This document shows, in pieces, positions 21,435-61,303 of a stretch of DNA of 64,000 bases. Both the position numbers and the translations under genes were made by a program. Source of the DNA: Macrostomum lignano. Lineage: Eukaryota. Numbering within the stretch: position 1 is the first letter of the stretch; each line of letters begins with the position of its first letter. The stretch lies in contig NIVC01001839.1 of assembly GCA_002269645.1 (NCBI GenBank), positions 215,595 to 279,594 on the forward strand, written 5' to 3'. The notes under the pieces were generated by a model. That model was given only the letters and a program-made list of their open reading frames with translations. It did no database searches and was not told the DNA's origin.

Positions 21435-24400
21435 ATGGAAGAAGAAGAGGTTTTATCTAAAAAGCAAAGGAACACCTTTAAGGTAAATTATTTGCTTTTT
21501 TCTGAACGACTTTCTAAGTGATACATTTATCTCTTTTTTAAAATAAACAAACTGCAAATTTACCTCATAAATTATTGAAACAGTTCCAAGGCTTCAATGA
21601 GCACAAGGAGAGGATTAAGTTAGCCTTATTGCGCAACCAGCTCTTTCCAATTAAGGTAAAGTCAAAATATTTTACTTGTATTTTCTACATGCTTCGAAGC
21701 TTAACAAAATTTTACTTTGCAATGTCTTAATGATTTTTAGCTTGACTCTGATACAGACACCAAGTGCGCTGCAGCATTGGAAAAGTGGACAGAATTAAAT
21801 TCTACTACTGAATATGGTAAGTAGTACATCCAGATATTATCGGTTATGTATTTAATATTAACTAGAAACCTGTGTGCACTTTGGACCCTTTGAAAATTTT
21901 AGTTGCCTTTCGCCGCGACGTGGAGGTCTTTGTCCAATCTTTGGAGATACTTGTTCTACACAAGGTGAGATAAACAGCATATTTAAAAACTAAGTTCCTT
22001 TATAATAAGAATTTTACCATTTAGATACTAATTTTTTAAATGTACTTTTTTAGGATGACGTCATCGCTACATTTAAAGAGGCCTTGCAGAACAGTAGCAT
22101 CGAATCGTTGCAGCCAATTATGGAGTGAGTATACTTAAAAATTTATGATTTTTTCGTGTTTTTGAGTCTTATTAACATCAAGTTCACTTTCACGTCCCTA
22201 AGTATTCACATTACCATCCCATTCACCCACATTGCCTCATTCACCCACTCAATATTCACATTAGCATCGGATTCACCCAACCACCCACCCACGATTCACA
22301 TTAGCATCGCATTCACCCACACAACCACCCACCATTCACATTGGCATCGCATTCACCCACCCAACCACCCACCATTCACATTGGCATCGCATTCATTTAC
22401 CCAACCACCCACGATTCACATTAGCATCGCATTCACCGACACAACCACCCACGATTCACATTAGCATCGCATTCACCCACACAACCACCCACCATTCACA
22501 TTGGCATCGCATTCACCCACCCAACCACCCACCATTCACATTGGCATCGCATTCATTTACCCAACCACCCACGATTCACATTAGCATCGCATTCACCGAC
22601 ACAACCACCCATCATTCACATTAGCATCGCATTCACCCACCCAACCACCCACCATTCACATTGGCATCGCATTCACCCACCCAACCACCCACCATTTACA
22701 TTGGCATCGCATTCACCCACCCAACCACCCACCATTCACATTGGCATCGCATTCACCCACCCAACCACCTACCATTCACATTGGCATCGCATTCATTTAC
22801 CCAACCACCCACGATTCACATTAGCATCGCATTCACCGACACAACCACCCACGATTCACATTAGCATCGCATTCACCCACACAACCACCCACCATTCACA
22901 TTGGCATCGCATTCACCCACCCAACCACCCACCATTCACATTGGCATCGCATTCATTTACCCAACCACCCACGATTCACATTAGCATCGCATTCACCGAC
23001 ACAACCACCCATCATTCACATTAGCATCGCATTCACCCACCCACCCACCCACCATTCACATTGGCATCGCATTCACCCACCCAACCACCCACCATTTACA
23101 TTGGCATCGCATTCACCCACCCAACCACCCACCATTCACATTGGCATCGCATTCACGCACACAACCACCCACCATTTACATAGGCATCGCATTCACCCAC
23201 CCACCCACAATTCACATTGGCATCGCATTCACCCACCCGCAGATTCGGCGTGGCCCTCTGCTTTGACCTTAGCGAAGCGATGCAGTGGGAATTCGGCAGC
23301 CTCGTGAGCATCTACACGGGCTTGTTGAGCCGCCACTCCGCGGCCAGCAGTCACCAGGCTCTCGAGCATGCGTTCACCGGCATCTCCTACACTCTGTACG
23401 CTTTACGTCGTCAACTGCGTCGACAACCGGACGAAGCAGCCATCCAATTGAAACCGTTGCTATTGGCTGGCGGTCACGTGACTGAATTAGCGGCCGAATC
23501 GTTTGCATTTTTATTGCGCAAATTGCCGAATCAATCTAATCAACTGACCGCTAGACTGTTGGACTTATTAGCTAGCTGGTTGGACAGTGCTGCAGCGTCC
23601 GATGATGCAGATCTGATGACGGAAGCTGTATCAGGCACTGTTTTCTATTGGCTTCGGGGCGCGGCTGGTCAGTTAGCTGCCGGACAATTCCAAACTGTCT
23701 ATCCGAGACTTATAGACTGGCTGATTGTCAATCAGGAGCTTCCCGCGACTAGAGAGATCCGTCTACGCTGCTTGACACTGGTGCATGTTCGCTTGTTGCG
23801 TCACGCTCGTCGAGGCGATAACAGCGACGCCGCTATCGAACCTATTCGCCGACAATTGCTAGACAGGCTAGCCGGCGGTTCAGCTTCCGACGCTGCCGAA
23901 CTAGTTGCTAGGCTGTTGCTAGGCGAATTCGATTGTTATTCGAAGAAAAATCGGCGTCAAGCTTTAGTATTGTCGCAGGCTTTGATTGGTGGAAAAGGCG
24001 ACCCAGAGCGATGGTGTCGATGTATTGAAAAGTTGTCGAACAACCAATCGACCTGGTCGAAATCTGTCGCTCGTCTGACTGCCGGCCTTACTCGATATTT
24101 TTGTCAGAGCAGCGACGGCACAAGCAAAATCACTGTTGATCATTGTCTTGAAGACAATTTCTGTCAGCGTCTGTTTCGTTGCTGTCGATTGTCGACCTGG
24201 ACGCTACCAGGTGTCGATGCCGACAATAGTGAAATTTGGCGTCGTAGATTTGAATTTGTTCAGCTGGTTGGCGGCGCCGGAGTCGGAGATGAAGCCGGTA
24301 GCGACAGTGGCAGTCTTGGCAGGCGCTTCCTGCGGTTGGCCTTGCCGATGCTAGCTGAGGCCGTTTGTCTCGGTGGCGCGGAAGCTTTCGAGCAACTCGG

Positions 24401-33400: not shown

Positions 33401-36400
33401 CATGGTTTAGTCAGGGTTTTTGTTTTAATTTGATAGAGAGGCATTCGTTTAAATTATTTAGCCAATCAATTTTATCGTGCGACCATTGCGTGACTGTTCG
33501 ACTCCCAGTGAGTTCTGCTCTCCACTTTTGTGGGCGTCCCAGTTGGCCCATAATTTATGGCCTGCTCATATTTTCTTTTCTCTCGATAAATTTCTCGATT
33601 TTTTACTGTTCATTTTTCGACCCTTGTTTATCATCCGCCGAATTTATTCATTTTTCTTATGCATCCTTTCTTCAGACTCTGCCATGAACCCTCCCTCAGA
33701 CTCTGCCATGAACCCTCCCTCAGACTCTGCCATGAACCCTCCCTCAGACTCTGCCATGAACCCTCCCTCAGACTCTACCATGAACCCTCCCTCAGACTCT
33801 ACCATGGACCCTCCTTCAGACTCTACCATGAACCCTCCCTCAGACTCTGCCATGAACCCTCCCTCAGACTCTGCCATGAACCCTCCCTCAGACTATACCA
33901 TGAACCCTCCTTCAGACTATACCATTAACCCTCCCTCCGAGTCTGCCATGAACCCTCCCTCAGACTATACCATGAACCCTCCTTCAGACTATACCATGAA
34001 CCCTCCTTCAGACTATACCATGAACCCTCCTTCAGACTATACCATGAACCCTCCTTCAGACTATACCATGAACCCTCCTTCAGACTATACCATGAACCCT
34101 CCTTCAGACTATACCATGAACCCTCCCTCAGACTATACCATGAACCCTCCCTCAGACTATACCATGAACCCTCCTTCAGACTATACCATGAACCCTCCCT
34201 CCGAGTCTGCCATGAACCCTCCCTCAGACTATACCATGAACCCTCCTTCAGACTATACCATGAACCCTCCCTCCGAGTCTGCCATGAACCCTCCCTCAGA
34301 CTATACCATGAACCCTCCCTCCGAGTCTACCATGAACCCTCCCTCAGAATCTACAATGAACCCTCCCTCAGAATCTGAAACAAACTATTTCTTAGAATTT
34401 GCTTCAACTGTTTCTTAGATTCTGTAATCTCTTCAAATCTACTTAATTCTTTACTTTTCTATTCCTCCTGTTACTTTTTCCACTAATAATTATTATACAC
34501 TGCAGCCAACGGCCCAACCTCTTGGGTGCCTAGCCATCCAGCGCTGCAAGTTAAGCAGAGTTGGTTGTGGTTAGTACGCAGCTTGCGGCACCCTCGAGTG
34601 CGGACGCCTTGAGGCTTGAGCGAGTAATAAAACTAAGCTGAAAGCTCTGTACAATTTGTACACAGTATTGCTTATGAATACAGATTTTGCTGAGCAGTTC
34701 ACTCACAGCCAAACCACTTATCCACCCATCCAGCTGAACGCCTGGGACAAACGGCACATTGAGATGCCCGACTTCGAACGGCGAGAACGCGGCCATCAAT
34801 CAGCTTTGACAATTGTGACGGCTTTGACAGCCGGTCCCAGCCTCTCTTCTTCATCATTGTCTGGCTGGTCTCAACTGCTTAACAATCGTTTAGAGACCCT
34901 GCTCATCGCTGAGCACTGCGCTCTGCATACCCTGGCTCACGTGACTGACGGCCCTCTGAGATTGTTGGCTTCGGAATTGCTGCAGTCTTTGATTGCTGCT
35001 TTGGCCGCTTTAGACATTGCGAGTACCGATGCAGCTGATCGTGATGAGTCTGAGGCTCGCTCTCGCGTGCTCAATATGCTCCTGTGGCGCTCCGTCTGGC
35101 CAGCCATTGCTCAGGGCGTCAAAATGGACGAGGTGAGGGGCCAGCTAGGTTTGCTGCTTGTTTTTTGGGGATCCTGTTCTCTCCCGCTATTATCCCGTTT
35201 TCTTCCCTGCTCTACAAATGTCCTCCCTGACTGACTCAAGAGTACCTTCTCGGACTTCCTATACCTTTAATTCCCCCTAATACCATCCTAGAACCTGCTC
35301 AAATTCCCCAAATACCTTCCTAGATTCCCCATAGCCTCTTACGAGGCTATGCCTCGTAGATTAGCCTCGTAGATTTAGCCCCATAGCCTCGTAGATGACG
35401 GATCTACGAGGCTTCTCGTAAATCCCCCAAATACCCTTCTTGATTCCCCATACCCTCTCGAATCCCCCAAATACCCTTTTTGATTCCCCATACCCTCTCG
35501 AATCCCCCAAATACCTTTTTTTATTCCCCATACCCTCTCGAATCCCCCAAATACCCTTTTTGATTCCCCATACCCTCTCAAATCCCCCAAATACCCTTTT
35601 TGATTCCCCATACCCTCTCGAATCCCCCAGAAACCCTTTTTGATTCCCCATACCCTCTCGAATCCCCCAAATACCCTTTTTGATTCCCCATACCCTCTCG
35701 AATCCCCCAAATACCCTTCTTGATTCCCCATACCTTCTCAAATTCCCTAAATACCCCCTAGATTCTCAATATCCTCTCATATTTCCTAAATACCCTCATA
35801 GATTCCCCATACCCTCTCAAATTCCCTAAATACCCTCCTAGATTCTTCATACCCTCTCTAATTCGCACACACCCTTCTATCTTCTTCTATTCCTGTCTGA
35901 GTTTGTTCTTTTGCCTCAGAAATTTCTGCTACCCATACTTCTGGCTCTTCTCACTCGCTGCTCAATAATTATGCCCCGTGTTGGGATTTATTTTCCTTCA
36001 CACAGGCACTGCTCTCTCAGTAGCATTCAGTAGGCCAATTTGGCTATCAATTTATTCTGTCTGTGCCTACCAGAGTATCGGTTCTCTTAATACACGGTTT
36101 TTTTCGCATTATTCATGAATATTTTCCTTCTCTATATGCTATGTTGACAATCCAAAAGTGATAAAAAATATACCAGCTGAGAGAATAAGTAGCCTGCCTC
36201 GCAGTGAGGCTTGTGTACTAACCTGTTAGTGCAAAGATGCTAGTTGATTAATGCTTGTTTCTGCTGACATACTCCCACCCACATTCTTCCCATTTTATAT
36301 ACAGATCCCCATTCTCCTTTCTAAACCTGCTCTAGACCCCCATTCTTCCCATCCATTCTAGAATTTCTCATAACAGTCTAGCTCTAGATCCCCATTCTTC

Positions 36401-39400
36401 CCATCCATTCTAGAATATCTCATAACAGTCTAGCTCTAGACCCCCATTCTTCCCATCCATTCTAGAATATCTCATAACAGTCTAGCTCTGGATCCCAAAC
36501 TGTATAAAATGAATTTCTCTAATTTCTCCCATGCTCCCAAAACCCTGTCTGGCAACAGAACCGTCGCGTGGAATACATCGGCCTACTAGGCAAAATTGTT
36601 ACCGAATTCGGTCACCATGCTCGCCTGCAAGGATTAGCGGGTCTCCTACCGTCGGCCCAGCAGCAGCAGGCATCTGCAGATGCAAGCGCCGGCAGTTCGA
36701 CATCCGCCTCAGTCAACGACTCATTTTTCGACAATGTTCGCAGCGTCAATGTGAGTAAATGTTTATCTACATGATTGTTTAGTCTGTATAGTCTGGACTA
36801 TCCTGTGTATGGTCTCACCTGTATCCATTTAACCTTCTCTCTAGTCGGCTCGAATCGTGAAAGGATTCCGCCAGCTGATCACTTATCTAGCCAGCCCTAG
36901 AGGGGATTGCATCCCTGCTAATCTGCTGTATCACTACCTGCTGCCGCTGCCTATGCACTATTTGCACAAGAGCGGCCGGTCTGCTTCAGCAGGGAAACAG
37001 CAGCAGCAGCAGCAAGCTTCTAACAGACGCAGCTTAATAGAATCCTCTTTAGAGCTGCTGGCCTCCATCAGCTCCCGTCTGTCTTGGCCGATGCTGCAGC
37101 AGCTGCTCAAACTCTGCCTGAAAGGCTTGGACGGGCCGGCTACGGAATCCAAGCTGCCAGTGCGACTGGCCGTTGCCGCCCTGTCCGGTCTGGGAGAAAT
37201 CGGAGAACTAGACGAGGATGATCAATTAGAAATCGAACCGGAAGCGGCTAGCAAGCAAACTGGTAATCGGAAGCGACGATTGCGTTTCTTCCAGCAATCG
37301 GTTCCGGTTAGTAACAGTTTTGCAACGGTTAAACGAGCGAAGAAATTGTCACCGGAAGTGAATAATGGCAGACCGGAAGTGACTAATAGCAAATCGGAAG
37401 TGACTAATGGCAAACCGGAAGTGACTAAAGGCGAACCGGAAGTGACTATAGGCGAACCGGAAGTGACTAAAGGCGAACCGGAAATGACTAATAGAAAACC
37501 GGAAGTGACTAAAGGCGAACCGGAAGTGACTAATGGCGAACCGGAAGTAACTAACGAAGAACCAGCAGCGTCAAATAGCGCCACTAGATCAATGGGAGGC
37601 AGCGGGCCGTTGACTTTTCTAATAGAATTCGTCTGTCCCCGATTGGAGCGCCACCTGTCCAGAGACAAGACCGCCGCTGAGCAGCAGCACCGGTTGGCGC
37701 CGCGACAGGAGCCCCAGGTGCTTCAAGTATCCGTGGCCGTGGCCCTCGCTCAATTATTAGCTAAGCTACCCCGCCGGCTGCGAGACCAACGCCTGCCTAA
37801 GCTGGTCTATCGGCTAGCGGAGTTCCTTCGCAGTCGGGAACACGCCGTACGCAAAGAGGCCGGTGCAACTTTAGTACGAGTTGTACAGTTGCTAGGCAAC
37901 GACTATCTAGGCTTTGTTGCCAGGGAATTGAGCCTGCTATTGGCTAGAGGATACACTCGGCACGTGTTGGCGCACACGCTGCACTCTCTGTTGCGTCACT
38001 GCCAGGCTGCTGGCATGCCCACCGGCTGTCTGGATGGCGAGACCCTGGATCGGCTGTGCCGCATCTACATGGACGAATTGTTGGGCGACTTGTCCAAGGA
38101 GAAAGAGGTCTAGAATTGATTCTATTGCGATGTTGTACTTTCTTTTTAGTTATCACTTGAGATTTTAAGTTCACTCTTATTTAAATTTGAAGTTCCCGTC
38201 TCCTAATCTAGATACCCGAAATCCCGGATCTTCCTAATTAGGTCATAAATTAATTACAATCATTAATGATTGGAATATTCCCTATCTAAATAAAAAATCC
38301 CAAATTCCGTCTCCCTAATTATATTAATTCATAAATTAAGTCCAATCACTCCCTATCTATAGATCACAAATCCCAAATCCCATCACTCCCTATCTATGGA
38401 TCACAAATCCCAAATCCCATCACTCCCTATCTATGGATCACAAATCCCAAATCCCATCACTCCCTATCTATAGATCACAATTCCCAAATCCCATCACTCC
38501 CTATCTATAGATCACAATTCCCAAATCCCATCACTCCCTATCTATGGATCACAAATCCCAAACCCCATCACTCCCTATCTATCGATCACAAATCCCAAAC
38601 CCCATCACTCCCTATCTATCGATCACAAATCCCAAATCCCATCACTCCCTATCTATAGATCGAGAACCACTCCCTGTCTATAGATCACAAAATCCCATCA
38701 CTTCCTATAGATCAAGAATCACTCATTATCTATAGATCACAAAATCCCATCACTTCCTATCTATAGATCAAGAACCACTCCCTATCTATATATTAAGAAC
38801 CACTTCCCTATCTATAGATCAAGAATCACTCCCTATCTATAGATCAAGAACCACTCCCTATCTATAGATTAAGAACCACTCCCTATCTATAGATCAAGAA
38901 CCACTCCCTATCTATAGATCAAGAACCAATCCCTATCTATAGATCAAGAATCACTCCCTATCTATAGATCAAGAACCACTCCCTATCTATAGATCAAGAA
39001 CCAATCCCTATCTATAGATCAAGAATCACTCCCTATCTATAGATCAAGAACCACTCCCTATCTATAGATCAAGAACCAATCCCTATCTATAGATCAAGAA
39101 CCACTCCCTATCTATAGATCAAGAACCACTCCCTATCTATAGATCAAGAACCACTCCCTATCTATAGATCAAGAACCACTCCCTATCTATAGATCAAGAA
39201 TCACTCCCTATCTATAGATCAAGAACCACTCCCTATCTATAGATCAAGAACCACTCCCTATCTATAGATCAAGAACCACTCCCTATCTATAGATTAAGAA
39301 CCACTCCCTATCTATAGATTAAGAACCACTCCCTATCTATAGATCAAGAATCACTCCCTATCTATAGATCAAGAACCACTCCCTATCTATAGATCAAGAA

Positions 39401-42400
39401 CCAATCCCTGTCTATAGATCACAAAATCCCATCACTTCCTATAGATCAAGAATCACTCATTATCTATAGATCACAAAATCCCATCACTTCCTATCTATAG
39501 ATCAAGAACCACTCCCTATCTATATATTAAGAACCACTTCCCTATCTAGATCAAGAATCACTCCCTATCTATAGATTAAGAACCACTCCCTATCTATAGA
39601 TCAAGAACCACTCCCTATCTATAGATCAAGAACCACTCCCTATCTATAGATCAAGAACCACTCCCTATCTATAGATCAAGAACCAATCCCTATCTATAGA
39701 TCAAGAATCACTCCCTATCTATAGATCAAGAACCACTCCCTATCTATAGATCAAGAACCAATCCCTATCTATAGATCAAGAACCACTCCCTATCTATAGA
39801 TCAAGAACCACTCCCTATCTATAGATCAAGAACCACTCCCTATCTATAGATTAAGAACCACTCCCTATCTATAGATTAAGAACCACTCCCTATCTATAGA
39901 TCAAGAATCACTCCCTATCTATAGATCAAGAACCACTCCCTATCTATAGATCAAGAACCAATCCCTATCTATAGATCAAGAACCACTCCCTATCTATAAA
40001 TCACAAATCTTAAATCCCATCACACACTATCTATAGATAAAAACTTCCATATCCCAACACTCCCTATCTACGAGGGATCTTAGTCTTAATTCGTAGATCT
40101 GAAATCCACTTGATCAACATATTGTTCTTAATCTTAGCCTAGAGAGTCAGTCAGATCAAAGTACAAATAGTCTATAGATATCTACGCCACCCCACCACCC
40201 CCCCCCTCGCAGGTGGAAGCGCTCACCCGCAAGCTGCCTGAGGCGCAGCGCACTCACGCCTATAGCGTGATGCACCGCCTTGGCTCCATGGTGGGCCCAA
40301 CCGGCCTGGCCCAGCTCACCAACATTCTGGCCAATCAGTGCTCCGCTGTGCGCAGCTTAGCCGCGCTTAAAAAACTCGAACGACTCTGTGGTCAGCTGGA
40401 ACGAGCCGACTCGTTGCCTGGCAACAGCGGATTAACAGACGAACAGTTGCTAACCGCCGCTCACCTGCTCTGTCGTCGAGCAGGCGACGAACAGAATGGC
40501 GATAATAATTCGAAAGATAAATTGTTAGTAGCATCAGGAATCGAACCCGCGGCTGAGCATCGAAGTGTCGGCATTCGCGGCCCGGACTGTCGACTACTGG
40601 ACCCGGAGCCTGCCAGATCCGAGACGCGACCCGCGCAGCTCGGCAGCTATCAAGTGCTGCTAAGATTCGGCCTGAGATTGCTCTACGCTGTGCTCAGAAA
40701 TGCTTCATCAAAAAGCGACTCAGAGAGCGGCAAGAATAAAAACTGCTCCCCGATATCGCGTCGGATGCTGGATCCGTTTGTGCCGATTCTGTTGAGCTCG
40801 TTGGATTCGCAACACACAGCTGTGCTCACGGCGGCTCTGCAGTGTCTCAGCCGTCTGGTTCCCCTGCATCAGTTGGCGGCTACAGCTGCTGCTGATCTCG
40901 ATAAAGGCCAAGGCCAATCCAGCAACGCTTACCGGCCGATTGCTAAGCGCGTTCTGGCTCTGTTTAACGAGCAAAGCTTGCACTGGTCAACTAGGCAACA
41001 GTTGCAGCAGCCGTCTCAATTGCAACAATTGCTGCATAAAACTTTAGCCGTTCTCATTAGACACGACGCGCTGTCGCAGCCGGATCTGGTCACCATAGTA
41101 GACTACATCGCTCTGGATGTGGACAGTCCGCACAGGGCCAGTCACGCTTTTCCTCTGCTCCGAGCTTTGCTAGCTAAACGCCTCAACCCTAAGCCGCAGC
41201 TGAGACACGAATTAGACGTTGAAACTGAGAAAGATCACGCCAGTCTGTCCTCTATCATGGACTCCTTGCGTAGTCTAGTGGTCACATCTGCGCTAGACTA
41301 TGTTCGCAGTCAGTCGCGCGACTGTCTGTTAATCTATCTTAGAGATTATCAACTGCCAGCTAAAACTGTACGACGCTATTTGGACTTCTTCTTAGTTCAG
41401 TTGGATTACGATGGCGTGGATGGTAGGAGCTCGGCTGTGCAGATGCTGGCCTCCCTGATCCACTGCATCTCAGCTGACTGGCTGGTGAATGGCGATCTGG
41501 CCAGGGTGCTGTTCCTCAAACTGTTAGTAGCCGCAGACTCGGAATGCAATGATCAGCTGAGAGCCCGGCTAACCGACTGCTTGCACGGCCTGTTGCGCAG
41601 ATGCGGCGCAGATCAGCGCAGAGAATTGTTTGCCTCAGCTTTGCGTCTGATGCGCACGGATGTTAAACAGTTGTCGCAACGGGTTGTTCAACAACGCCTG
41701 GGTCTGACTGCGGCTTTGTCGTTTTTTGAGTACAGAGAAGTTGAAACAGAGAGCGGCGATGAAGAGAACTGGTCCACAGTTGAATTGCACACCTGCTTAG
41801 CTGAACTGTTGAAGCAACTGGCTGATGCATCCTTGAGTACAGCCGAACACGAGCAGAAGCCTAAAAGCCTAAAACAAGCTCAAGAGACTGACGTGGTAAA
41901 CGAAGCAATCGATCATGCTCTGTTCCGTTGTGTTGACTTGTTAGCCAGATGTCCCAATGCGCTGCAGCTGCAGCAGGTACACACAGACATCTGGTCATTG
42001 TTAGAGAGCCTACTGAATCATCGGTTCGCTTGGGTTCGGCGTCGCTGTCTGCAGTTGGTTGCTAACAGACTGGCTGAGCAGTCCCAGCCGGCAATGACTG
42101 ACACAGACTCAGCCATGTCTCACTGTCGCACTCTGGCCTTGGCATTTTTTGATCAGTTAAAATCGCCTCACCTGGATGAGGCCTGGTCAGACGATGTGGC
42201 TCGCGCACTTGTTCACCTGTGCTGTCGGGTTCACCAGCTAGAACTGGGTAGTGACGCGAGTCCAGCAACAGCCGGTTTAACCGGCGCAGATAAAGGCTTC
42301 TCAACCGAATGGATTCTGCTCAGAGTTGGCCGAGAGTCGCGCTACGAATTGCAGCATTTGAAGCCGTCAACGCTTCGCCGCTGCCTAGCCTTGAAGGTGT

Positions 42401-42783
42401 GCGCCGGGGTGGCCTCCGTGCTGGGCGGTGACGCTTTGGAATCGTCCGGCTGTCTTCGCCGGTGCCTGGCCGTGGCGGCGCGCGAACTTCGACAGCGAAA
42501 TGCTTCGCCAGAAGTGACCGATCTGGCGCACTCGCTGTTGGACACACTGCGACGGGGCGTCGGAGAGTCCGCCGTGGCCTCGGCGCTGGCCCAGCTGACC
42601 AGGTCGCGAGCTGCTGCCCGGTCCGACCGTGCCGGATCGCTGGCTGCCGCCGCCGTCACTCAACCGGAAGTGTTCGCTAGACGGAAACGCCGCAAACAGC
42701 AAAAGAAAGCTGAAGCGGCCAAGGCCAAGATTGCCAAGTTTAAATTGGCCAGGCGTGGCGGTCTGGCTGCTTCTAAGAAATAG
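21435..42783 (+). CDS. UTP20: UTP20 / small-subunit processome component 20 (HEAT-repeat), 2949 aa; join(21435..21482,21584..21655,21741..21816,21903..21964,22054..22124,23243..24502,25300..25476,25578..26781,29682..30361,31385..32032,32666..32792,34734..35132,36559..36750,36845..38107,40213..42783)
   Basis: Motifs matching UTP20 in order: NTFK|FQGF, ALEKWTELN, LAAESFAFLLRKL, LNAWDKRHIEMPDFERR, SFFDNVRS, FLRSREHAVRKEAG, LLARGYTRHVLAHTLHSLL, KEKE|VEAL, FLVQLDYDGVDGRSSA, basic C-tail. All 14 introns GT-AG with consistent phase; 8850 nt total with no internal stop. Confidence 0.93.
22200..23240. repeat. 40 bp minisatellite (ATTCACATTGGCATCGCATTCACCCACCCAACCACCCACC)n in UTP20 intron 5
   Basis: About 25 copies; the last copy runs into the acceptor ...ATTCACCCACCCGCAG. 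Confidence 0.95.
24504..25292. repeat. 23 bp G-rich minisatellite (GCTGAGGGAGGGGTGTAGCCTGA)n forming almost all of UTP20 intron 6
   Basis: About 34 copies from the donor to within about 8 nt of the acceptor. Confidence 0.95.
26930..29590. repeat. 31-33 bp purine-rich minisatellite (GAGAGGAGAAGGATAGAGTCGGGATAGAGCTAA)n in UTP20 intron 8
   Basis: About 80 copies with degenerate edges. Confidence 0.96.
30405..31297. repeat. 28 bp minisatellite (CCAGCCTCCCAGATCCTCAGTTGCTGGG)n in UTP20 intron 9
   Basis: About 32 copies; source of ORFs 30346-31360. Confidence 0.95.
32043..32530. repeat. 24 bp minisatellite (GGGGTGAGATTCCAGTCAGTCTCA)n in UTP20 intron 10
   Basis: About 20 copies starting about 10 nt after the donor. 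Confidence 0.95.
33670..34375. repeat. 24 bp minisatellite (CAGACTATACCATGAACCCTCCTT)n in UTP20 intron 11
   Basis: About 29 copies; source of the (MNPPSDYT)n ORF. Confidence 0.95.
35424..35870. repeat. 39 bp minisatellite (CCCCAAATACCCTTTTTGATTCCCCATACCCTCTCGAAT)n in UTP20 intron 12
   Basis: About 8 good copies plus degenerate flanks. Confidence 0.9.
36334..36495. repeat. 52 bp unit x3 in UTP20 intron 12
   Basis: AGACCCCCATTCTTCCCATCCATTCTAGAATWTCTCATAACAGTCTAGCTCT repeated three times. Confidence 0.85.
37352..37561 (+). repeat. Coding 21 bp minisatellite in UTP20 exon 14 encoding (PEVTNGE)x10
   Basis: CCGGAAGTGACTAATGGCGAA units, in frame and stop-free. Confidence 0.92.
38350..40000. repeat. 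Compound 37 bp then 25 bp minisatellite (AAGAACCACTCCCTATCTATAGATC)n in UTP20 intron 14
   Basis: The two unit types share the core CACTCCCTATCTATAGATCA. Confidence 0.95.
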
Positions 42784-48145: not shown

Positions 48146-50146
48146 TCAGATGAGGGTCTCCCTCGTTGTGTCCGCGGCCGCTGCCTGCCAGCTGGCAGCC
48201 GAGTCGCTTTCATATCCAGCTTCTCTTCTTCCTCTTTGAAGCAGCTGCTGTTGCTGCCGCTGCTGCTGCTGTTGCAGCTTCAGCTGTTGCAGAATTCTCG
48301 GACGAACCGCCTGCTTCTGGACGGCCGCGGCTGCGGCGGCTGCCTTCGAGGCCGGCCGAAGAAACGTCGACGGGCTCGACTCCAGGCGGACAATCTCCGG
48401 CGGCGACGGTGGCGACGGCTGGCGCCAGGCCGACATCGGCGCCGGCGGCGTTAGCGGCGGAGTCAGCAGCGGTGGAGGCGGAGGCGTTGGAGGCGGCGGC
48501 GACAGGCGACGAACTTCGGGTCGATGACGAGGACAAGAGCCCCGGCCGCTGGTTGGAGCAGGTCGACGACGAGGCTGATGATGCCTCTGCTGATGCTGCT
48601 GATGCTGCACCAGCTGTCGCTGCTGTTGAATCTCTTTACGTCGTCGTTTCGTCATCTTTGAGATGTCAACGCTATCGGCAGCTGCCTCGTCAGACGAATC
48701 GGCATTCACCCCGGATGTGGCAGCGGTTGTCGCAACGCTGGCGCTGTCGTCGTCGCAGTAGTCGACGCGAGCCTTCTGCAGGCTGGCCCGCTGCTTCTGG
48801 CTGGCGATGCGCAGCAGGATGATGTCGCACAGCATGGAGGACAGGCCGAACAGGGCCAGGCCGCTGCCCAGGTTCATCGACAGGCTGTAGAAATCGAAGC
48901 GGCCGCCCTCGCCAGACACGGACACGAAGATCTTGATGCCGTAGGCGTGCACCAGCATTCGGCGGTCTTCGCCCTCGCTGCGGTAGTTGTAGGCGTACTG
49001 CACCGAGAAGCCATGCGTGTCGGTGCCTCGCCCGGTGTCCAACTCGCGGAAGTGGTACTTCGGAAGGCAGCGCTCGTCAGGCAAGTCGAAGTTGCACATC
49101 CAGGAGATGTCAACTCCGATAGCTCCGCCAACTCTGTAGATGTCCTCGGCCGATTTGGCGTCGCCTGTGGCGTAGTGAAGAATGTCGCCCAGCCGGAACA
49201 CGGGGCAATAAGTGAAGTTGGGATGCTGCTGCTCGTACAGGCAGTTGTGCAGGTAGTCGCTGGTCATCCAATCCAAAATGTTTCGCCGCTTTTTGTTGAA
49301 CGCTCGAAAGTCGACGCTGTTTTTGAGTAGAATGGTGAAGTCTCTGGCTCGGGTGAGCACAGATTGGCCTGGCAGCTGGAAATTGTCCTCCATGAGCAGC
49401 GGGCACCAGCCGTACGACATGCAGGTGTGCGTACTGCTGTTGCACTTGCCCGTGCGCCGCCCGTATTCGCCGATGGTTCCGCCGGCGCAGTCGCTGTCCC
49501 AGTAGCAGTGTCCGGCCCTCTCTGGACAAGCCGACATCGACTGGCGATCGGTGACGCGAGCGTTAGTCGTGATGAAAATGGCGCCGTTCATGATCGGGGG
49601 AATGATGTAGTCCGCAGCGTCCCAGACCCTCGCTCCGTTGTCCCAGTCGTCGCTTTTGTTAACAAAATCCAAACCCTTCACTTTGAAGACAACGCCGCCC
49701 TCTGGAGTCTCCTTGGCCTGGTAGCCTTTCTTGTGCCAGATGATGTAGAACAGGAAGTACACAATCACAGACAGCTGGACGCTGCGATAAAACAAGCCAA
49801 ACTTAATGCTTCGGATCACCACCACTTTTTGCAGCTTGTATTCAAAGAAGCCGGCCAGAATTTTGTGAAGAAACTGCGGTCCCGGGCGACTCGTGCGGGC
49901 CTGCGACGGCTGCTTCTCGTGCTCCATGACTGGTTTAGCGTTGGCCTTAGTCTGTCGGGATTGACTCAACGTTGGGCGAGGCGATTTCGGGTATTTTATT
50001 ATCCCTTTGGGCCAATCGGAACCCATCAAGCTTTCATTGGCTGATACTGGGGAATTAGCCAACCTACCCTTGTAGTCCAGAGTCGAGTGTGGAAGTGGCA
50101 TGAGAACCAACAGAGGAGGAGAAGCTGAGAGCTTCTGCAGACGCAT
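48146..50146 (-). CDS. P2RX: P2X purinoceptor-family trimeric cation channel, single coding exon, 666 aa from the first in-frame ATG (593 aa if started at 49927)
   Basis: FFEY..KVVVIRS, TM1, KGYQ, VVFKVKG, WDAADY, all 10 ectodomain Cys (ACPE, CYWDSDC, TGKC, TC..GWCP, C...YCPVFRLGDI, WMCNFD..C), FTILLKN, AYGIK, G.GGRF, NLGSGLALFG...CDII (TM2); long Q/P/A-rich C-tail. Confidence 0.95.
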   Translation of the reverse strand: MRLQKLSASPPLLVLMPLPHSTLDYKGRLANSPVSANESLMGSDWPKGIIKYPKSPRPTLSQSRQTKANAKPVMEHEKQPSQARTSRPGPQFLHKILAGFFEYKLQKVVVIRSIKFGLFYRSVQLSVIVYFLFYIIWHKKGYQAKETPEGGVVFKVKGLDFVNKSDDWDNGARVWDAADYIIPPIMNGAIFITTNARVTDRQSMSACPERAGHCYWDSDCAGGTIGEYGRRTGKCNSSTHTCMSYGWCPLLMEDNFQLPGQSVLTRARDFTILLKNSVDFRAFNKKRRNILDWMTSDYLHNCLYEQQHPNFTYCPVFRLGDILHYATGDAKSAEDIYRVGGAIGVDISWMCNFDLPDERCLPKYHFRELDTGRGTDTHGFSVQYAYNYRSEGEDRRMLVHAYGIKIFVSVSGEGGRFDFYSLSMNLGSGLALFGLSSMLCDIILLRIASQKQRASLQKARVDYCDDDSASVATTAATSGVNADSSDEAAADSVDISKMTKRRRKEIQQQRQLVQHQQHQQRHHQPRRRPAPTSGRGSCPRHRPEVRRLSPPPPTPPPPPLLTPPLTPPAPMSAWRQPSPPSPPEIVRLESSPSTFLRPASKAAAAAAAVQKQAVRPRILQQLKLQQQQQRQQQQLLQRGRREAGYESDSAASWQAAAADTTRETLI

Positions 50147-51006: not shown

Positions 51007-52417
51007 TCAACGGTCGTCCTTTTCAAGACTCTTAGCGGCAACTCGACCAATTGCTTCTTGCAGAAGCAGAGCTCCGGTGCGAATGACCGATCGAGCTGAC
51101 CGCTTCCGGTTAGCGCCTTCGCCAAGATTGCAGGACTTTCGCTCGCAATCCACCGGTAGCATCTTCGACAGCTTGTTCGACTTGAGCGCATCGTCAAGCC
51201 TTGGCTTCCTGGGAACTGTGGCGCTTGTTGAACGGCTTCCTCCGCCGGTTTTGATCGACTCGGTGTCCAGAATTAACGAAACAACTTGAACACCGCCAAC
51301 TTCGGCCAAGAACATCTGCATAAATGCAGTAATAAATCAGCAAAAATGTTTTTGGTGACCAGATACTGCTAGCTACGTGTCTGGGTCTTTTCAGAATAAG
51401 GATTCCAACTTTTCAAACTGTTCCAAGGTTCATGGAGGAAAGAAGGGGCAGAATACAGCTCTGCGAAATTAGAGGTTTGTGCCAAAAAAATCTGTGGTAA
51501 ATGGCCTGCACGTAAAAGGTCTAAAGAAACGTTCAAATCTTCATCAAATTAATCCGGCTTTTGTGTGATAACGCAGCTTGTGCAAATCGCGTGATTTGAT
51601 AGCTCAATTGACGACAGTATCCTCAGAATAAGCATGGCCTACTTACCTGGTAGGTGCCCTCGCCAACTTTTCGTACCAATCGTACGCGTCTTCCCCGGCT
51701 GTCTTTAGCAAACTCGGCCTTGTTCTTCTCTTCGCCGCCCGGTTCGTCAACAGCAGCAGCGATGGATCGCCTGAGCAGAGCGCCTGAACGTTGGCGCTTT
51801 TCAGGCGACGTAGCGTAATAGGCAATCAGATCGACTACGGTTTTGAATCGGCGGTTCGAGTACAGGTAGTAACCAGCCGGGCTCTCCCTGACCAGGTAGT
51901 GCTTCACCCTAGAGGACTCTTGCTTCGTCAGCTGGCCCTCTACCACGGAGGCGCTTCGCCGAGCTCGGAAGAGACGGGACACCAGCGCAGCCACGGAGGA
52001 GTTACGCACTCCGTCGGCCCCGTCACGTCGCCTCGAAGAGTTCACTTCTTTTAGTACGCTGATAGCGTACCTTTCGCGACGGCTGTGACAGGGCCTGAGC
52101 AGGTAAGTTCCACCCTGCCTGTCGCCGCTAAGCAGCAGCTTGTTGGCCTCCTGTCTGGTGCAGTTCACCCAACAGTCGAGACTTTCCACTTGTCTATAAA
52201 TCGACTCTTCGCTCTTGATTGTAGCGATGGTTGAAACCGGAGTTGAAGAGTCTCTTGGCGGCAGGGCCGGTGGTGGCGGCGACTCTTGACGACGTTTCTG
52301 CAGCGCGTCGCTCCGTCTGCGAAGTTGAACCGTGTTGTTGCCGGTGTCCGAGTTTTCCACCGCCATCATTGAAGGTGGACGGGGTGGCAGTTCCGGAGGT
52401 TCGCTTGAGTTTACCAT
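51007..52417 (-). CDS. SH2-domain protein with Pro-rich N-terminus and vestigial tyrosine-kinase start, no catalytic domain; complement(join(51007..51315,51647..52417)), 359 aa
   Basis: SH2 motifs W..TRQEA, TYLLRPC, YAISV, VKHY, F.TVVDLIAYY; then RVRLVRKVGEGTYQ|MFLAEV. Donor CAG|GTAAGT at 51646 and acceptor TTTATGCAG at 51316 are both phase 0. Confidence 0.8.
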
Positions 52418-53029: not shown

Positions 53030-53700
53030 TAGGTAGATGCATGGAAATCGGCAGATAGAGGCATGGAAATCGGCAGATAGAGGCATGGAGATTTGCAGGT
53101 AGATGCATGGAAATCGGCAGATAGAGGCATGGAAATCGGCAGATAGAGGCATGGAGATTTGCAGGTAGATGCATGGAAATCGGCAGATAGAGGCATGGAA
53201 ATCGGCAGATAGAGGCATGGAGATTTGCAGGTGGTTGCATGGAAATCGGCAGATAGATGCATGGAAATCGGCAGATAGAGGCATGGAGATTTGCATGTAG
53301 ATGCATGGAAATCCGCAGATAGAGGCATGGAGATTTGCAGGTAGATGCATGGAAATCGGCAGATAGAGGCATGGAAATCGGCAGATAGAGGCATGGAGAT
53401 TTGCAGGTAGATGCATGGAAATCGGCAGATAGAGGCATGGAGATTTGCAGGTAGATGCATGGAAATCGGCAGATAGAGGCATGGAAATCGGCAGATAGAG
53501 GCATGGAGATTTGCAGGTAGATGCATGGAAATCGGCAGATAGAGGCATGGAGATTTGCAGGTAGATGCATGGAAATCGGCAGATAGAGGCATGGAAATCG
53601 GTAGATAGATGCATGGAGATCGGCAGATAGATGCATGGAGATCGGCAGATAGATGCATAGATATCGGTAAATAGATGTATGGACATCGGCAGATAGATGC
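53030..53700. repeat. 22 bp two-variant minisatellite (GCATGGAAATCGGCAGATAGAG / GCATGGAGATTTGCAGGTAGAT)n
   Basis: About 30 subunits between the divergent SH2 and otopetrin genes. Confidence 0.95.
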
Positions 53701-57100: not shown

Positions 57101-58154
57101 TGACTAGCGCCCAAATGTATTGCAATAAAATCCTTATTCAGGCAACGGCACCGCCCGAAATTCGTCTTGCACTGGCCGATTCAAAATCGACAAAAACTCT
57201 CCATCGGCCCAGCTCGGACCCTACCTGTACCCATGTGCAGTGGAGTACGGCTTGATCTGTGCAGCAATTTGCTACAAATTCTTCACAAATGTCGGCAACA
57301 CGGAGGCGGCAAAGAAGTCGACTCCTGTCAGTGAAGCGACTGCGCTGCCTCGAAGCACAACTTGTCACAAGTCGCACCGAGGCCTATTCGGCGGCCTAAT
57401 TGTCACAATCTGCGTCCTGGTACCGATGGTCAGCTTGCTGATAGCGCGTCAGCAAGCCAATAGTGAGTACAGAGATCTGCACGTTATCGCCATGCTGATT
57501 ATTGAATGCATCGTGTTAGTCTGCACAACAATAATAGCTCTATTTGGAGCTGTCAATGCTATCCGAAAATTAAAACTGTCCAAACTCGAGCGTCACGAAG
57601 CGTTCGACGTCAATTTATTGTTTGTCGGCCTGGCTGGCATCGTCTGTTACAGCTTGTTCGTGGCTATCTCTGTCGGGGCTTGCATGATGACGTCACCGAA
57701 CGATCAAAACGCAGGCTGTCAGTGGGGCAGGAGACGACAAGCTCAAATTACTCAGTTAACTGGATTGAAAGCTTTGGCTGATCTGACAGAATCGGTTGCT
57801 CAGACTTTGTTCATTATGCAGGTGATTCAGCGGAAAATTACAATTGAATTAGCCCAGAAAATGGAGAAACCCGGTCGAGGCATCACAGCGGCTCTGCTAC
57901 TTGCCAACTTGGCTATGTGGATCGAGTCCGTGTTCGAAGTTCAACGCGATGTTGCCCAGGACTTTTTGAACTACTACTTTGGCGTCATGCCGTGGAGCAT
58001 CATAAAGCTAATCTTTCAGCCCTTGATCATATTCTACAGGTTTCACTCGACTGTGTGCCTCTCCGAGATCTGGGTGCACAGTTACAAGCTGAACAGCCTG
58101 CACGACAGTCAGTCTCACAGGTCGACTCCGCGCAAAGGGGCTCGTTCAGAGTAG
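54130..58154 (+). CDS. OTOP: Otopetrin proton-selective channel, 723 aa; join(54130..54212,54667..54832,55162..55558,55786..55872,55950..56113,56196..56457,57142..58154)
   Basis: NLYLRFGAIIFG, FIVLQTYFLF, IRFFLIHLAVANLCIWIKTVVYE, PYLYPCAVEYGLI, CHKSHRGLFGG, LAQTLFI, LLLANLAMW, PLIIFYRFHSTVCLSEIW. All junctions GT-AG and frame-consistent (2172 nt). Exon 1 is the least certain. Confidence 0.93.
54350..54520 (+). mobile_element. tRNA-derived SINE with CORE-like domain in otopetrin intron 1
   Basis: A-box TAGCCTAGTGG (54355-54365), B-box GGTTCGATTC (54399-54408), then GTGTCCTTGAGCAAGACACTTAAC...TTCAGTTCACCCAGCTGTAAAATGGG resembling the MIR/CORE-SINE central domain. Confidence 0.75.
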
Positions 58155-60811: not shown

Positions 60812-61215
60812 AGAAAGCAAGCATCCCCCCAGATAGCAAGTATCCCCCCCCCCAGATAGCAAGCATCCCCCCCCCAGATAGCAAGTATCCCCCCCCCCAG
60901 ATAGCAAGTATCCCCCCCAGATAGCAAGCATCCCCCCAGATAGCAAGTATCCCCCCAGATAGCAAGTATCCCCCAGATAGCAAGCATCCCCCCAGATAGC
61001 AAGCATCCCCCAGATAGCAAGCATCCCCCAGATAGCAAGCATCCCCCAGATAGCAAGCATCCCCCAGATAGCAAGCATCCCCCAGATAGCAAGCATCCCC
61101 CAGATAGCAAGTATCCCCCAGATAGCAAGCATCCACCCAGAGAGCAAGCATCCCCCCAGATACCAAGCATCCACCCAGATAGCAAGCATCCTGCAGATAG
61201 CAATCACCCCTAAAT
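60812..61215. repeat. 17-21 bp minisatellite (CCCCCAGATAGCAAGCAT)n, same family as 1..400
   Basis: About 20 copies with variable C-runs. Confidence 0.95.
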
Positions 61216-61303
61216 AGCAAGCATCCTGAATAGAAAGAATTCTAAACATGTAGATACACGTAGCTAGTACCCCTCTCTCCCAAATAGCCATTACCCCCCC
61301 CCC

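What the first reader, a model, noticed from the sequence alone, without database searches (positions are those of the whole stretch)
48940..49690. P2X subunit that keeps one half of the ATP site and has lost the other
Seen: K-x-K (VVFKVKG, about 49676-49684) and FTILLK are intact, but G-Y-N-F-R is G-F-S-V-Q (49012-48998) and RTLIKAYG is RMLVHAYG (His at 48947-48949). All 10 Cys and both TMs are conserved and the ORF is intact. Known: P2X ATP sites are inter-subunit; in zebrafish P2X4 numbering K70, K72, T189, L191 and K193 come from one subunit and N296, R298 and K316 from the neighbour. So the three key residues of one face are all replaced and the other face is preserved. Inference: a homotrimer should be ATP-insensitive; the protein may be an obligate heteromeric or modulatory subunit that lowers the number of ATP sites, or a channel gated by another ligand (the K-to-H swap hints at pH or metal sensing).
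Basis: partly seen in the sequence, partly recalled or inferred. Interest (0 to 1): 0.8.

Follow-up and report, generated by a model that had tools for sequence, protein, structure and literature searches.

The report
Flatworm P2X subunit with half ATP site
This is an intact, selectively maintained flatworm (Macrostomum-type) gene for a P2X ion-channel subunit that has kept one half of the ATP-binding pocket and lost the other. It therefore probably works only as a partner subunit, or responds to something other than ATP, but nobody has tested it.

Summary
An uninterrupted minus-strand ORF (ATG 49927 to stop 48146, 593 aa) is a full-length P2X protein: Pfam PF00864 E=3e-98, human P2X4 E=1e-75, and a predicted fold with TM-score 0.85 to solved P2X.

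- **Kept:** both TM helices, all 10 ectodomain Cys, and K-x-K, T and K of the lower-body half-site.
- **Lost:** N/R/K of the upper-body half-site are S308/Q310/H327, in a gap-free alignment.

Of 53 columns at least 85% conserved in 177 other P2X representatives, it keeps 49. Three of the four changed columns are exactly N, R and K.

The same S/Q/H signature is in three Macrostomum lignano copies (79% identity). dN/dS against one of them is 0.20, so the gene is not decaying.

- The Thr of the N-terminal TXK motif and the Tyr of the YXXXK surface-expression motif are also lost.
- The gene is intronless, whereas a canonical paralogue has 7 exons.
- The long tail ends in a conserved RETLI.

Similar degenerate-site P2X genes exist in flukes, tapeworms and hagfish.

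Most likely it is an accessory subunit for heterotrimers with canonical P2X. Function is untested. It is a new variant of a known kind.

The parts
48146..49927 (-). Single-exon CDS of a divergent P2X subunit (593 aa plus stop). The P2X domain is residues 28-380, followed by a tail of about 200 aa.
   Evidence: ORF list; translation; Pfam PF00864 E=2.8e-98, residues 28-380 of the protein on profile positions 1-353 of 361; PDB phmmer hP2X4 E=1.2e-75; Foldseek TMt 0.84-0.88 to P2X1/P2X4. In-frame ATGs further upstream (e.g. 50146) cannot be excluded. 49927 is chosen by homology with the M. lignano start MCSLR....
49826..49840 (-). N-terminal Y-K-L-Q-K (residues 30-34) in place of the family motif Y-x-T-x-K/R. 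The conserved Thr is Leu32.
   Evidence: The column is T in 117 and S in 12 of 148 other P2X. It is L in all three Macrostomum clade members and M in the fluke/tapeworm atypical clade. T18A/K20T effects are given in PMC3360091.
49736..49807 (-). TM1 (residues about 41-64).
   Evidence: AlphaFold helix 41-64; alignment to TM1 of P2X4.
49676..49684 (-). K82-V-K84, equivalent to zfP2X4 K70/K72. This lower-body half of the ATP site is kept.
   Evidence: Invariant in alignment A1; codons identical in the M. lignano copy; local dN/dS 0.03 for codons 72-121.
49385..49408 (-). W-C-P-L-L-M-E-D (174-181). The family's WCPxE glutamate is Leu178 in the MAFFT alignment, or is retained as Glu180 after a 2-residue insertion in the HMMER alignment.
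   Evidence: The column is E in 91% of other P2X. In hP2X3 this Glu (E156) salt-bridges the NFR arginine (PMC6590987). The placement is ambiguous for the window. In the M. lignano copies the position is P or Q under either alignment.
49322..49339 (-). F-T-I-L-L-K (197-202), equivalent to zfP2X4 F188/T189/L191/K193. Kept.
   Evidence: L200 is Gln in the M. lignano relatives.
48998..49012 (-). G-F-S-V-Q (306-310) in place of G-(Y/W/F)-N-F-R. N296->S, F297->V, R298->Q.
   Evidence: The Ser codon differs synonymously from the M. lignano copy (TCG vs TCC).
48938..48961 (-). R-M-L-V-H-A-Y-G (323-330) in place of R-T-L-I-K-A-Y-G. K316->H327.
   Evidence: The column is K in 152 of 164 other P2X and H in 3.
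48809..48886 (-). TM2 (residues about 348-373) with the conserved GSG and Asp368.
   Evidence: Invariant N352, G354, G356, C367, D368; AlphaFold helix 346-389.
48776..48883 (-). 108-nt tract (codons 349-384) that differs at a single base from the M. lignano Mlig019017g3 gene, against 23% mismatch elsewhere.
   Evidence: Third-position identity is 93-100% here versus 50-70% elsewhere. A run of 61 identical bases is expected about 1e-4 times.
48773..48787 (-). A-S-L-Q-K (381-385) in place of the post-TM2 Y-x-x-x-K surface-expression motif. The Tyr is Ala381.
   Evidence: The column is Y in 107 and F in 25 of 155. The motif's function and its rescue by heteromerisation are given in PMC3360091.
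48149..48751 (-). Low-complexity cytoplasmic tail of about 200 aa (acidic, then basic/Gln/His-rich, then Pro-rich, then poly-Q). It ends in R-E-T-L-I (48149-48163).
   Evidence: Translation. The tail cannot be aligned with the M. lignano copy except for the last five residues RETLI, which are identical. The fit to a class I PDZ-ligand pattern (S/T-x-hydrophobic-COOH) is from my own knowledge.

Best explanation
The gene encodes a real, selectively maintained member of the P2X family from a Macrostomum-type flatworm. It belongs to an intronless, fast-diverged paralogue lineage.

It has kept the pore, the disulfide scaffold and the lower-body half of the ATP pocket (K82, K84, T198, L200, K202). 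It has given up the upper-body half (N->S308, F->V309, R->Q310, K->H327). It has also lost the Thr of the N-terminal TXK motif and the Tyr of the YXXXK surface-stability motif.

The most likely mode of action is as an accessory subunit in heterotrimers with the canonical P2X paralogues of the same animal.
- In a 2 canonical : 1 variant trimer, its intact lower-body face completes one ATP site with a canonical neighbour. Its dead upper-body face removes one site. Two sites remain, and two are enough to gate.
- Trimers with two or three variant subunits would be silent to ordinary ATP concentrations.
- The subunit would thus lower the number of ATP sites. Through its N-terminus and long tail with a C-terminal RETLI, it would probably also alter desensitisation, trafficking or anchoring.

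Shown: the sequence features, their conservation and purifying selection. Inferred: ATP insensitivity of homomers, heteromeric assembly and stoichiometry.
For: - **Family membership and intact architecture:**
- **One-sided loss:** only N308S, R310Q, K327H (plus the alignment-dependent E178L) depart from 53 highly conserved columns.
- **Conservation of the derived state:** the same S/Q/H is in three M. lignano copies. dN/dS is 0.20 over 368 codons with dS 0.72.
- **Asymmetric constraint:** the K-x-K strand has dN/dS 0.03 and the head domain 0.47.
- **Residue assignment to the two subunits:** PMC3866589.
- **Concatemer data:** one K308A per P2X2 trimer gives EC50 23-42 uM versus 19 uM. Two dead sites abolish gating (PMC4035740). 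K69A-P2X2 is rescued by wild-type P2X6 (PMC3866589).
- **YXXXK motif:** mutants traffic poorly as homomers and are rescued by heteromerisation (PMC3360091).
- **TXK motif:** mutants give fast-desensitising P2X2 receptors and barely functional or non-functional P2X1 and P2X3 receptors; the same review's reference list cites a paper on a dominant-negative P2X1 PKC-site mutant (PMC3360091).
- **Partners exist:** M. lignano has canonical paralogues, Mlig018619 and A0A1I8H227.
- **Precedent:** silent Dictyostelium dP2XC/D suppress dP2XB currents on co-expression (PMC2787382).
Against: - There is no expression, assembly or electrophysiology data for this gene or any relative.
- Heteromerisation cannot be tested with the tools at hand, which predict monomers only.
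- The rules for TXK, YXXXK and the ATP residues come from vertebrate receptors. They may not transfer to flatworms.
- The adenine-contact Leu (L200) is Gln in the M. lignano copies. A third clade member (A0A1I8ISC6, a dubious gene model) lacks the K-x-K strand altogether. The 'kept' face may therefore not be under special constraint across the clade.
- With only a pairwise comparison, per-site selection on the kept face cannot be separated from the overall 79% identity.
- The species of the window is not established.
Confidence: 0.45

Rival explanations
1. It is a homomeric channel with a re-tuned pocket. The trimer still assembles on its own. It would be gated by something other than micromolar ATP: very high ATP, another nucleotide or anion, protons or zinc acting through His327, or an unknown ligand.
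For: - The whole gating machinery is conserved: pore, Asp368, disulfides and 49 of 53 conserved columns.
- The pocket keeps three Lys and gains a titratable His. That His is identical in the M. lignano copies and recurs in schistosome atypical P2X.
- An ATP-insensitive K69C-P2X2 carrying a bulky label in the pocket opens to zinc or acid without ATP (PMC4460280).
- The authors of the dP2XC/D study also raise non-nucleotide ligands (PMC2787382).
Against: - The position is Arg, not His, in the third clade member. It is Q or T in other fluke atypical proteins, so there is no consistent new chemistry.
- Loss of the TXK Thr and the YXXXK Tyr predicts poor homomer function or surface stability, if vertebrate rules hold.
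- No candidate ligand can be named.
Confidence: 0.25
2. It is a dominant-negative or non-conducting regulator. It co-assembles with canonical subunits mainly to silence or retain them, or it acts as a scaffold through its long tail. It does not form a working channel.
For: - Three separate defects each give non-functional or poorly expressed receptors in vertebrate P2X.
- dP2XC/D give a dominant-negative phenotype with dP2XB.
- A tail of about 200 aa ends in a conserved RETLI.
Against: Pore-lining TM2 and the conserved Asp are strictly kept. TM2 is the most conserved part of the protein within the clade. That is unexpected if conduction no longer matters, although the local conservation may partly reflect gene conversion.
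Confidence: 0.2
3. It is a decaying retrocopy (processed pseudogene) that happens to retain an open frame.
For: The gene is intronless while a canonical paralogue has 7 exons. The tail is low-complexity. One M. lignano copy (g2) has a frameshifted tail.
Against: - The frame is open for 593 codons.
- dN/dS is 0.20 at dS 0.72.
- 49 of 53 conserved columns and all 10 Cys are kept.
- The derived residues are shared with three M. lignano copies, with a synonymous difference in the Ser codon.
- The C-terminal RETLI is conserved.
Confidence: 0.04
4. It is an alignment or sequencing artefact, and the N/R/K residues are present but shifted.
For: An N-Y-R triplet lies 7 residues downstream (315-317).
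Against: Three independent alignments agree, and there is no gap between Cys287 and Gly330. NYR aligns with the canonical YYR/YYK. The same sequence is found in independently assembled M. lignano contigs.
Confidence: 0.02

Closest known systems
Macrostomum lignano hypothetical proteins BOX15_Mlig019017 g1/g2/g3 (PAA61171, PAA82904, PAA81535)
   Same: 79% identical over the P2X domain. Same GFSVQ and RMLVHAYG, same YxLQK N-terminus, same Ala in place of the YXXXK Tyr, intronless, and same C-terminal RETLI.
   Different: The tail is otherwise unalignable. The adenine-contact Leu is Gln. There is no synteny with the window. These proteins are annotated only as hypothetical, and no paper found in the library discusses them.
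Canonical flatworm P2X: M. lignano Mlig018619 and A0A1I8H227, and the Schistosoma mansoni ATP receptor family (SmP2X was shown to be ATP-gated by Agboh et al. 2004, cited from my own knowledge)
   Same: About 40-45% identity. Same fold, 10 Cys, K-x-K, FT..K and the TM2 motif.
   Different: They have GWNFR, K316, YETxK and YRxAK intact. Mlig018619 has 7 exons.
Atypical P2X clade of flukes and tapeworms (Trichobilharzia CAH8840334, Schistosoma margrebowiei VDO74744, Fasciola TPP63337/THD26064, Opisthorchis/Clonorchis TGZ71468, Dibothriocephalus VDN14635)
   Same: - N->S in most.
- K316->H/Q/T.
- R298->Q/E in some.
- The TXK Thr is replaced (by Met).
- The WCPxE Glu is often lost.
- K70 and T189 are mostly kept.
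   Different: They have large ectodomain insertions. K72 is often lost too, and the YXXXK Tyr/Phe is kept. Grouping with the Macrostomum clade has only 28% NJ bootstrap support, so shared origin versus parallel loss is unresolved.
Dictyostelium dP2XC and dP2XD
   Same: P2X-family proteins that give no nucleotide-evoked current alone and suppress a functional paralogue on co-expression (PMC2787382).
   Different: They are intracellular amoebal proteins and very distant in sequence. Which residues cause the silence is not established.
Mammalian P2X6
   Same: A subunit that does not form functional homotrimers but works in heterotrimers, e.g. two P2X2 plus one P2X6 (PMC3866589).
   Different: P2X6 keeps all ATP-binding residues. 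Its defect is in assembly and ER exit, not in the pocket.
Engineered P2X2 K308A / K69A concatemers
   Same: They give the exact experimental analogue of one dead half-site per subunit. One mutant subunit is tolerated and two are not (PMC4035740).
   Different: They are artificial and carry a single point mutation. Here nature has replaced three or four residues of the same face.
Hagfish 'P2X purinoceptor 3-like' (Eptatretus A0A8C4QWY6, Myxine UPI00358F777C)
   Same: The only other cluster among 142 with the lower face 4/4 kept and the upper face 0/3 kept (S, K, Q).
   Different: It is a vertebrate lineage and an independent event. R->K is conservative, and the TXK Thr is kept.

Membership tests
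P2X receptor protein family (Pfam PF00864) | Full-length match to the family profile | tested here: met
   E=2.8e-98, 329.7 bits, residues 28-380 on profile positions 1-353 of 361. 34 PDB P2X sequences match at E<=1e-46.
P2X receptor protein family (Pfam PF00864) | Two transmembrane helices flanking a large ectodomain, and a P2X fold | tested here: met
   AlphaFold helices 41-64 and 346-389, mean pLDDT 73. Foldseek top hits are all P2X, with TMt 0.84-0.88 and E about 1e-33.
P2X receptor protein family (Pfam PF00864) | Ten conserved ectodomain cysteines (five disulfides) | tested here: met
   C134, 141, 147, 162, 169, 175, 229, 241, 278 and 287 are invariant in alignment A1. The feature is described in PMC3360091.
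P2X receptor protein family (Pfam PF00864) | TM2 pore motif with the conserved Asp (rP2X2 D349) | tested here: met
   N352, G354, G356 and D368 are invariant.
ATP-gated P2X channel (functional class) | Lower-body ATP residues K70, K72, T189, K193 (zfP2X4 numbering) | tested here: met
   K82, K84, T198 and K202 are present.
ATP-gated P2X channel (functional class) | Upper-body ATP residues N296, R298, K316 | tested here: not met
   They are S308, Q310 and H327. F297 is also Val.
ATP-gated P2X channel (functional class) | N-terminal TX(K/R) motif | tested here: not met
   The Thr is Leu32. The column is T or S in 129 of 148 other sequences.
ATP-gated P2X channel (functional class) | Post-TM2 YXXXK surface-expression motif | tested here: not met
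   The Tyr is Ala381 and the Lys (K385) is kept. The column is Y or F in 132 of 155.
ATP-gated P2X channel (functional class) | ATP-evoked cation current | not testable with these tools
   Needs heterologous expression and electrophysiology.
Obligate heteromeric / accessory P2X subunit (P2X6-like role) | Co-assembly with another P2X subunit and dependence on it for function | not testable with these tools
   Only monomer structure prediction is available. Canonical paralogues exist in M. lignano, but co-expression is unknown.
Processed pseudogene | Disrupted frame or neutral evolution (dN/dS about 1) | tested here: not met
   Open frame of 593 codons, and dN/dS 0.20 over the P2X domain.

The most novel reading that the evidence does not exclude
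Natural 'half-site' P2X subunits are a recurrent, selected class. Examples are this Macrostomum lineage, the fluke/tapeworm atypical clade and a hagfish P2X3-like gene, together with mirror-image proteins that keep N/R/K but have lost K70/K72.

Their job would be to set how many ATP sites a heterotrimer has, and at which interfaces. This would be a mode of receptor tuning unknown in the seven mammalian subunits.

A stronger version is that the S/Q/H pocket with its His makes the homomer a proton- or metal-gated P2X channel that no longer needs ATP.
Probability: 0.2. Interest if true: 0.8.

Novelty: new variant of a known kind. Interest (0 to 1): 0.55.

Why it matters
All seven mammalian P2X subunits keep the full set of ATP-contact residues. 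The idea that two of three sites suffice therefore rests on engineered mutants and concatemers.

A naturally evolved subunit that has deleted exactly one face of the inter-subunit pocket, while conserving everything else, would be a natural experiment on three questions: site stoichiometry, the direction of signal transmission from each half-site, and heteromer assembly rules.

If the fluke and tapeworm atypical P2X genes work the same way, parasite ATP receptors may be heteromers whose pharmacology differs from the single cloned schistosome receptor. That bears on using them as drug targets.

If instead the homomer responds to another stimulus, it would extend the ligand range of the P2X fold.

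Tried and rejected
1. **Other P2X copies in the window.** tblastn of the protein against the window found none.
2. **Synteny with the M. lignano Mlig019017g3 locus.** blastn and tblastx found only the CDS and shared repeats. The L26 and mitochondrial-carrier neighbours are not in the window.
3. **Source species.**
   - Exact-protein look-ups of the P2X and of the neighbouring SH2 ORF found nothing.
   - A homology search with the UTP20 ORF returned nothing at 1e-20.
   - A search with the Vangl ORF returned no Macrostomum hit.
4. **Common origin with the fluke/tapeworm atypical clade.** NJ bootstrap support is only 28%. No maximum-likelihood program was available.
5. **The fourth changed conserved column (WCPxE Glu).** MAFFT says Leu178. 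HMMER pairwise alignments keep Glu180 after a 2-residue insertion. It is left as ambiguous.
6. **AlphaFold monomer.** It confirms the fold, but the tool returns no coordinates. Pocket geometry and the E178/E180 question could not be examined.
7. **Literature.** No paper in the library links P2X and Macrostomum beyond passing mentions. None was found describing natural P2X subunits lacking N/R/K.
8. **Non-coding similarity.** The 3' and 5' flanks show none to the M. lignano copy.
Full report
**1. What is there**

Reading the minus strand and listing ORFs shows one uninterrupted frame. The first homology-supported ATG is at 49927 and the stop at 48146, giving 593 aa.
- Pfam places a full-length P2X_receptor domain on residues 28-380 (E=2.8e-98).
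- phmmer against PDB sequences gives human P2X4 at 1.2e-75 and all other solved P2X types behind it.
- An AlphaFold model built on a 20-sequence alignment (mean pLDDT 73) has the two expected helices, 41-64 and 346-389.
- Its best Foldseek matches are exclusively P2X structures, with TM-score normalised to target of 0.84-0.88.
- The gene is a 50-65% GC island in flanks of 32-45% GC.
- There is no second P2X copy in the window.

**2. Check of the observation**

- K-V-K is at 49684-49676.
- G-F-S-V-Q is at 49012-48998.
- The His codon is at 48949-48947.
- FTILLK is at 49339-49322.

The HMMER alignments to human and zebrafish P2X4 put GFSVQ under GYNFR and RMLVHAYG under RTLIKAYG/RTLIKGYG, with no nearby gap. 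MAFFT alignments of 20 and of 180 sequences agree.

The downstream N-Y-R (315-317) lines up with the canonical Y-Y-R/K. It is several residues up the beta-hairpin, so the 'N/R/K placed elsewhere' refuter fails.

Ten ectodomain Cys are invariant in the alignment.

**3. Is it more than chance?**

I ran an exhaustive HMMER search of 1.84 billion cluster representatives. It gave 1438 P2X hits, and the best 150 were returned. I aligned them with the earlier hits.
- Among 53 columns at least 85% conserved in 177 other P2X, the window protein keeps 49.
- The four changed are N308S, R310Q, K327H and E178L.
- Three of the four are therefore exactly the upper-body ATP residues (hypergeometric p about 2e-4).

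The fourth is the Glu of the WCPxE motif. In human P2X3 that Glu (E156) salt-bridges the NFR arginine next to the ATP gamma-phosphate (PMC6590987). This one is alignment-dependent, because HMMER keeps Glu180 after a two-residue insertion. I count it as ambiguous.

In a census of the seven ATP residues over 142 complete sequences, 95 are fully canonical. Only the window protein, its M. lignano relative and a hagfish protein have the lower face 4/4 kept and the upper face 0/3 kept.

**4. Relatives**

The closest protein is Macrostomum lignano BOX15_Mlig019017g3, at 79% identity. It is one of three copies at least 90% identical to each other. All three have GFSVQ and RMLVHAYG.

A third, more distant M. 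lignano member is A0A1I8ISC6, at 58% identity. It has V, E and R at the three positions and lacks the K-x-K strand. Its model carries about 250 aa of implausible N-terminal sequence and may be faulty.

Canonical paralogues exist in the same species: Mlig018619 and A0A1I8H227, with GWNFR, K316, YETxK and YRxAK.

The window's own species could not be fixed. Exact look-ups and two neighbour-gene searches were uninformative.

**5. Selection**

This is a Nei-Gojobori comparison of the window CDS with the Mlig019017g3 CDS (locus L001). Over 368 codons of the P2X domain, dN=0.147, dS=0.721 and dN/dS=0.20.

| Region | dN/dS |
|---|---|
| K-x-K strand (codons 72-121) | 0.03 |
| Head domain (codons 122-171) | 0.47 |

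- The derived Ser is encoded by different synonymous codons in the two genes.
- The gene is therefore not a decaying copy, and the S/Q/H state itself has been maintained.
- With one pairwise comparison, face-specific selection cannot be separated from the general constraint.

**6.

(a) The Thr of the N-terminal TX(K/R) motif is Leu32. The column is T or S in 129 of 148 sequences. In P2X2, T18A/K20T causes fast desensitisation. In P2X1 and P2X3, the same changes give barely functional or non-functional receptors. The review's reference list also cites a paper describing a dominant-negative P2X1 mutant at this site (PMC3360091).

(b) The Tyr of the post-TM2 YXXXK motif is Ala381. Mutating this motif limits surface expression of homomers. 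Heteromerisation with wild-type subunits rescues it (PMC3360091).

(c) Other radical, clade-specific replacements at conserved columns are E170M, I171S, P208R, R295E and F309V.

(d) Both the window gene and Mlig019017g3 are intronless, while canonical Mlig018619 has 7 exons. A retrogene origin is plausible.

(e) The tail of about 200 aa cannot be aligned between the two genes, except that both end in RETLI. This fits the class I PDZ-ligand pattern (my own knowledge).

(f) A 108-nt tract over TM2 (48883-48776) differs at one base from the M. lignano gene, against 23% elsewhere. I read this as a gene-conversion tract. It would imply that both genes share a genome. Nucleotide-level constraint is the alternative.

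**7. The pattern is rare but not unique**

Flukes and tapeworms carry a well-supported atypical P2X clade (NJ bootstrap 92-98%).
- N is replaced by S or I.
- K316 is replaced by H, Q or T.
- R is replaced by Q or E in some members.
- Met replaces the TXK Thr.
- The WCPxE Glu is often lost.
- K70 and T189 are mostly kept.

Whether this clade and the Macrostomum clade share an origin is unresolved, with 28% bootstrap support. The Macrostomum clade is not sister to either canonical Macrostomum paralogue (0-0.5%).

Two hagfish genera share a P2X3-like protein with S, K and Q at the three positions.

Several proteins show the mirror image, with K70/K72 lost and N/R/K kept.

I found no paper in the library describing any of these as a class.

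**8. How it most likely works**

Experimental groundwork is as follows.
- In P2X2 tandem trimers, one K308A subunit leaves the ATP EC50 at 23-42 uM versus 19 uM.
- Two intact sites are 'necessary and sufficient'. Disrupting two sites abolishes activation (PMC4035740; PMC3866589).

A subunit whose upper-body face is dead but whose lower-body face is intact removes exactly one site per copy.

| Trimer (canonical : variant) | ATP sites left | Predicted result |
|---|---|---|
| 2 : 1 | 2 | Should gate |
| 1 : 2 | 1 | Should not gate |
| 0 : 3 | 0 | Should not gate |

Two further motif losses are tolerated or rescued in vertebrate heteromers, and the pore is strictly conserved. The best-supported reading is therefore an accessory subunit for heterotrimers with canonical paralogues (confidence about 0.45).

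Rivals:
- A homomer re-tuned to another stimulus (about 0.25). Interest in this comes from the conserved His, and from the report that a pocket-modified, ATP-insensitive P2X2 opens to zinc or acid (PMC4460280).
- A mainly dominant-negative or scaffolding role, as suggested for Dictyostelium dP2XC/D (PMC2787382) (about 0.2).
- A pseudogene (about 0.04).
- An artefact (about 0.02).

**9. Comparison and novelty**

By homology and fold it is a member of the P2X family. It fails three features that characterise ATP-gated P2X channels (N/R/K, TXK and YXXXK), so I do not file it as an ATP-gated homomeric receptor.
- In function it most resembles engineered K308A subunits and silent partners such as P2X6 or dP2XC/D.
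- P2X6 keeps its ATP residues, however, and the amoebal proteins are unrelated in detail.
- I rate it a new variant of a known kind.

Interest is moderate to fairly high for P2X specialists, because it offers a natural test of site stoichiometry. It is limited by the complete absence of functional or expression data, and by the fact that sister sequences are already in public databases.

Noticed in passing
window 48776-48883 (minus strand; codons 349-384 of the P2X gene): This 108-nt tract over TM2 has a single mismatch to the M. lignano Mlig019017g3 gene, against 23% mismatch elsewhere. Third-position identity is 93-100%. It looks like a gene-conversion tract between paralogues, which would put both genes in one genome. 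Nucleotide-level constraint is the alternative.
   Followed up: partly
window 48146-49927 versus L002 6001-12368: The divergent P2X gene and its M. lignano relative are intronless, while the canonical paralogue Mlig018619g2 has 7 exons. The divergent lineage may have started as a retrocopy.
   Followed up: partly
window 48149-48163 (minus strand): The last five residues, R-E-T-L-I, are identical in the window protein and the M. lignano copies, although the rest of the tail of about 200 aa is unalignable. This fits a class I PDZ-binding C-terminus. The tails share an order of acidic, then basic/Gln/His-rich, then Pro-rich segments.
   Followed up: partly
window 57240-58154 (+): An ORF with a strong Otopetrin (proton channel) domain (PF03189, E=1e-43) lies about 7 kb from the P2X gene. 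It is probably one exon of a larger gene. No link to the P2X gene was examined.
   Followed up: no
window 9197-13858 (+), 29649-42783 (+), 51626-52417 (-): Neighbouring genes by Pfam are Strabismus/Van Gogh-like (two ORFs), UTP20 (N-terminal, central and C-terminal domain ORFs spread over about 13 kb) and an SH2-domain ORF. None is syntenic with the M. lignano Mlig019017g3 locus, whose neighbours are ribosomal L26 and a mitochondrial carrier.
   Followed up: partly
whole window, e.g. 448-1671, 10725-11972, 22254-23238, 26916-29556, 38643-40003, 53031-53700: The window is packed with minisatellite arrays, with periods of 18-66 bp, tens of copies and 80-96% matches. They lie mostly between the coding ORFs, probably in introns and intergenic DNA. 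The 18-bp array at 1-386 recurs at 60812-61226.
   Followed up: no
P0086/P0181 and P0110 (Fasciola hepatica THD26065.1 and THD26064.1, same 258-kb contig): Two atypical, degenerate-site P2X genes have adjacent accession numbers on one Fasciola contig, which suggests a tandem pair. The atypical clade also includes a tapeworm (Dibothriocephalus latus).
   Followed up: partly
P0076 / P0180 (Eptatretus burgeri, Myxine glutinosa 'P2X purinoceptor 3-like'): Hagfish carry a P2X with K-K-T-K kept and N/R/K replaced by S/K/Q. It is at least 90% identical between the two genera. This is an independent vertebrate example of the same one-sided pattern.
   Followed up: no
P0041, P0075, P0112, P0142, P0146, P0150, P0163 (P2X representatives): These are mirror-image proteins that keep N/R/K but have lost K70 and/or K72 (and sometimes T189/K193). 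Half-site loss therefore occurs on either face in nature. The species of most were not looked up.
   Followed up: no
P0278 (M. lignano Mlig019017g2): One of the three M. lignano copies has a frameshifted, shortened C-terminal tail after ...RRRRRSAG. This is either an assembly error or a copy losing its tail.
   Followed up: no
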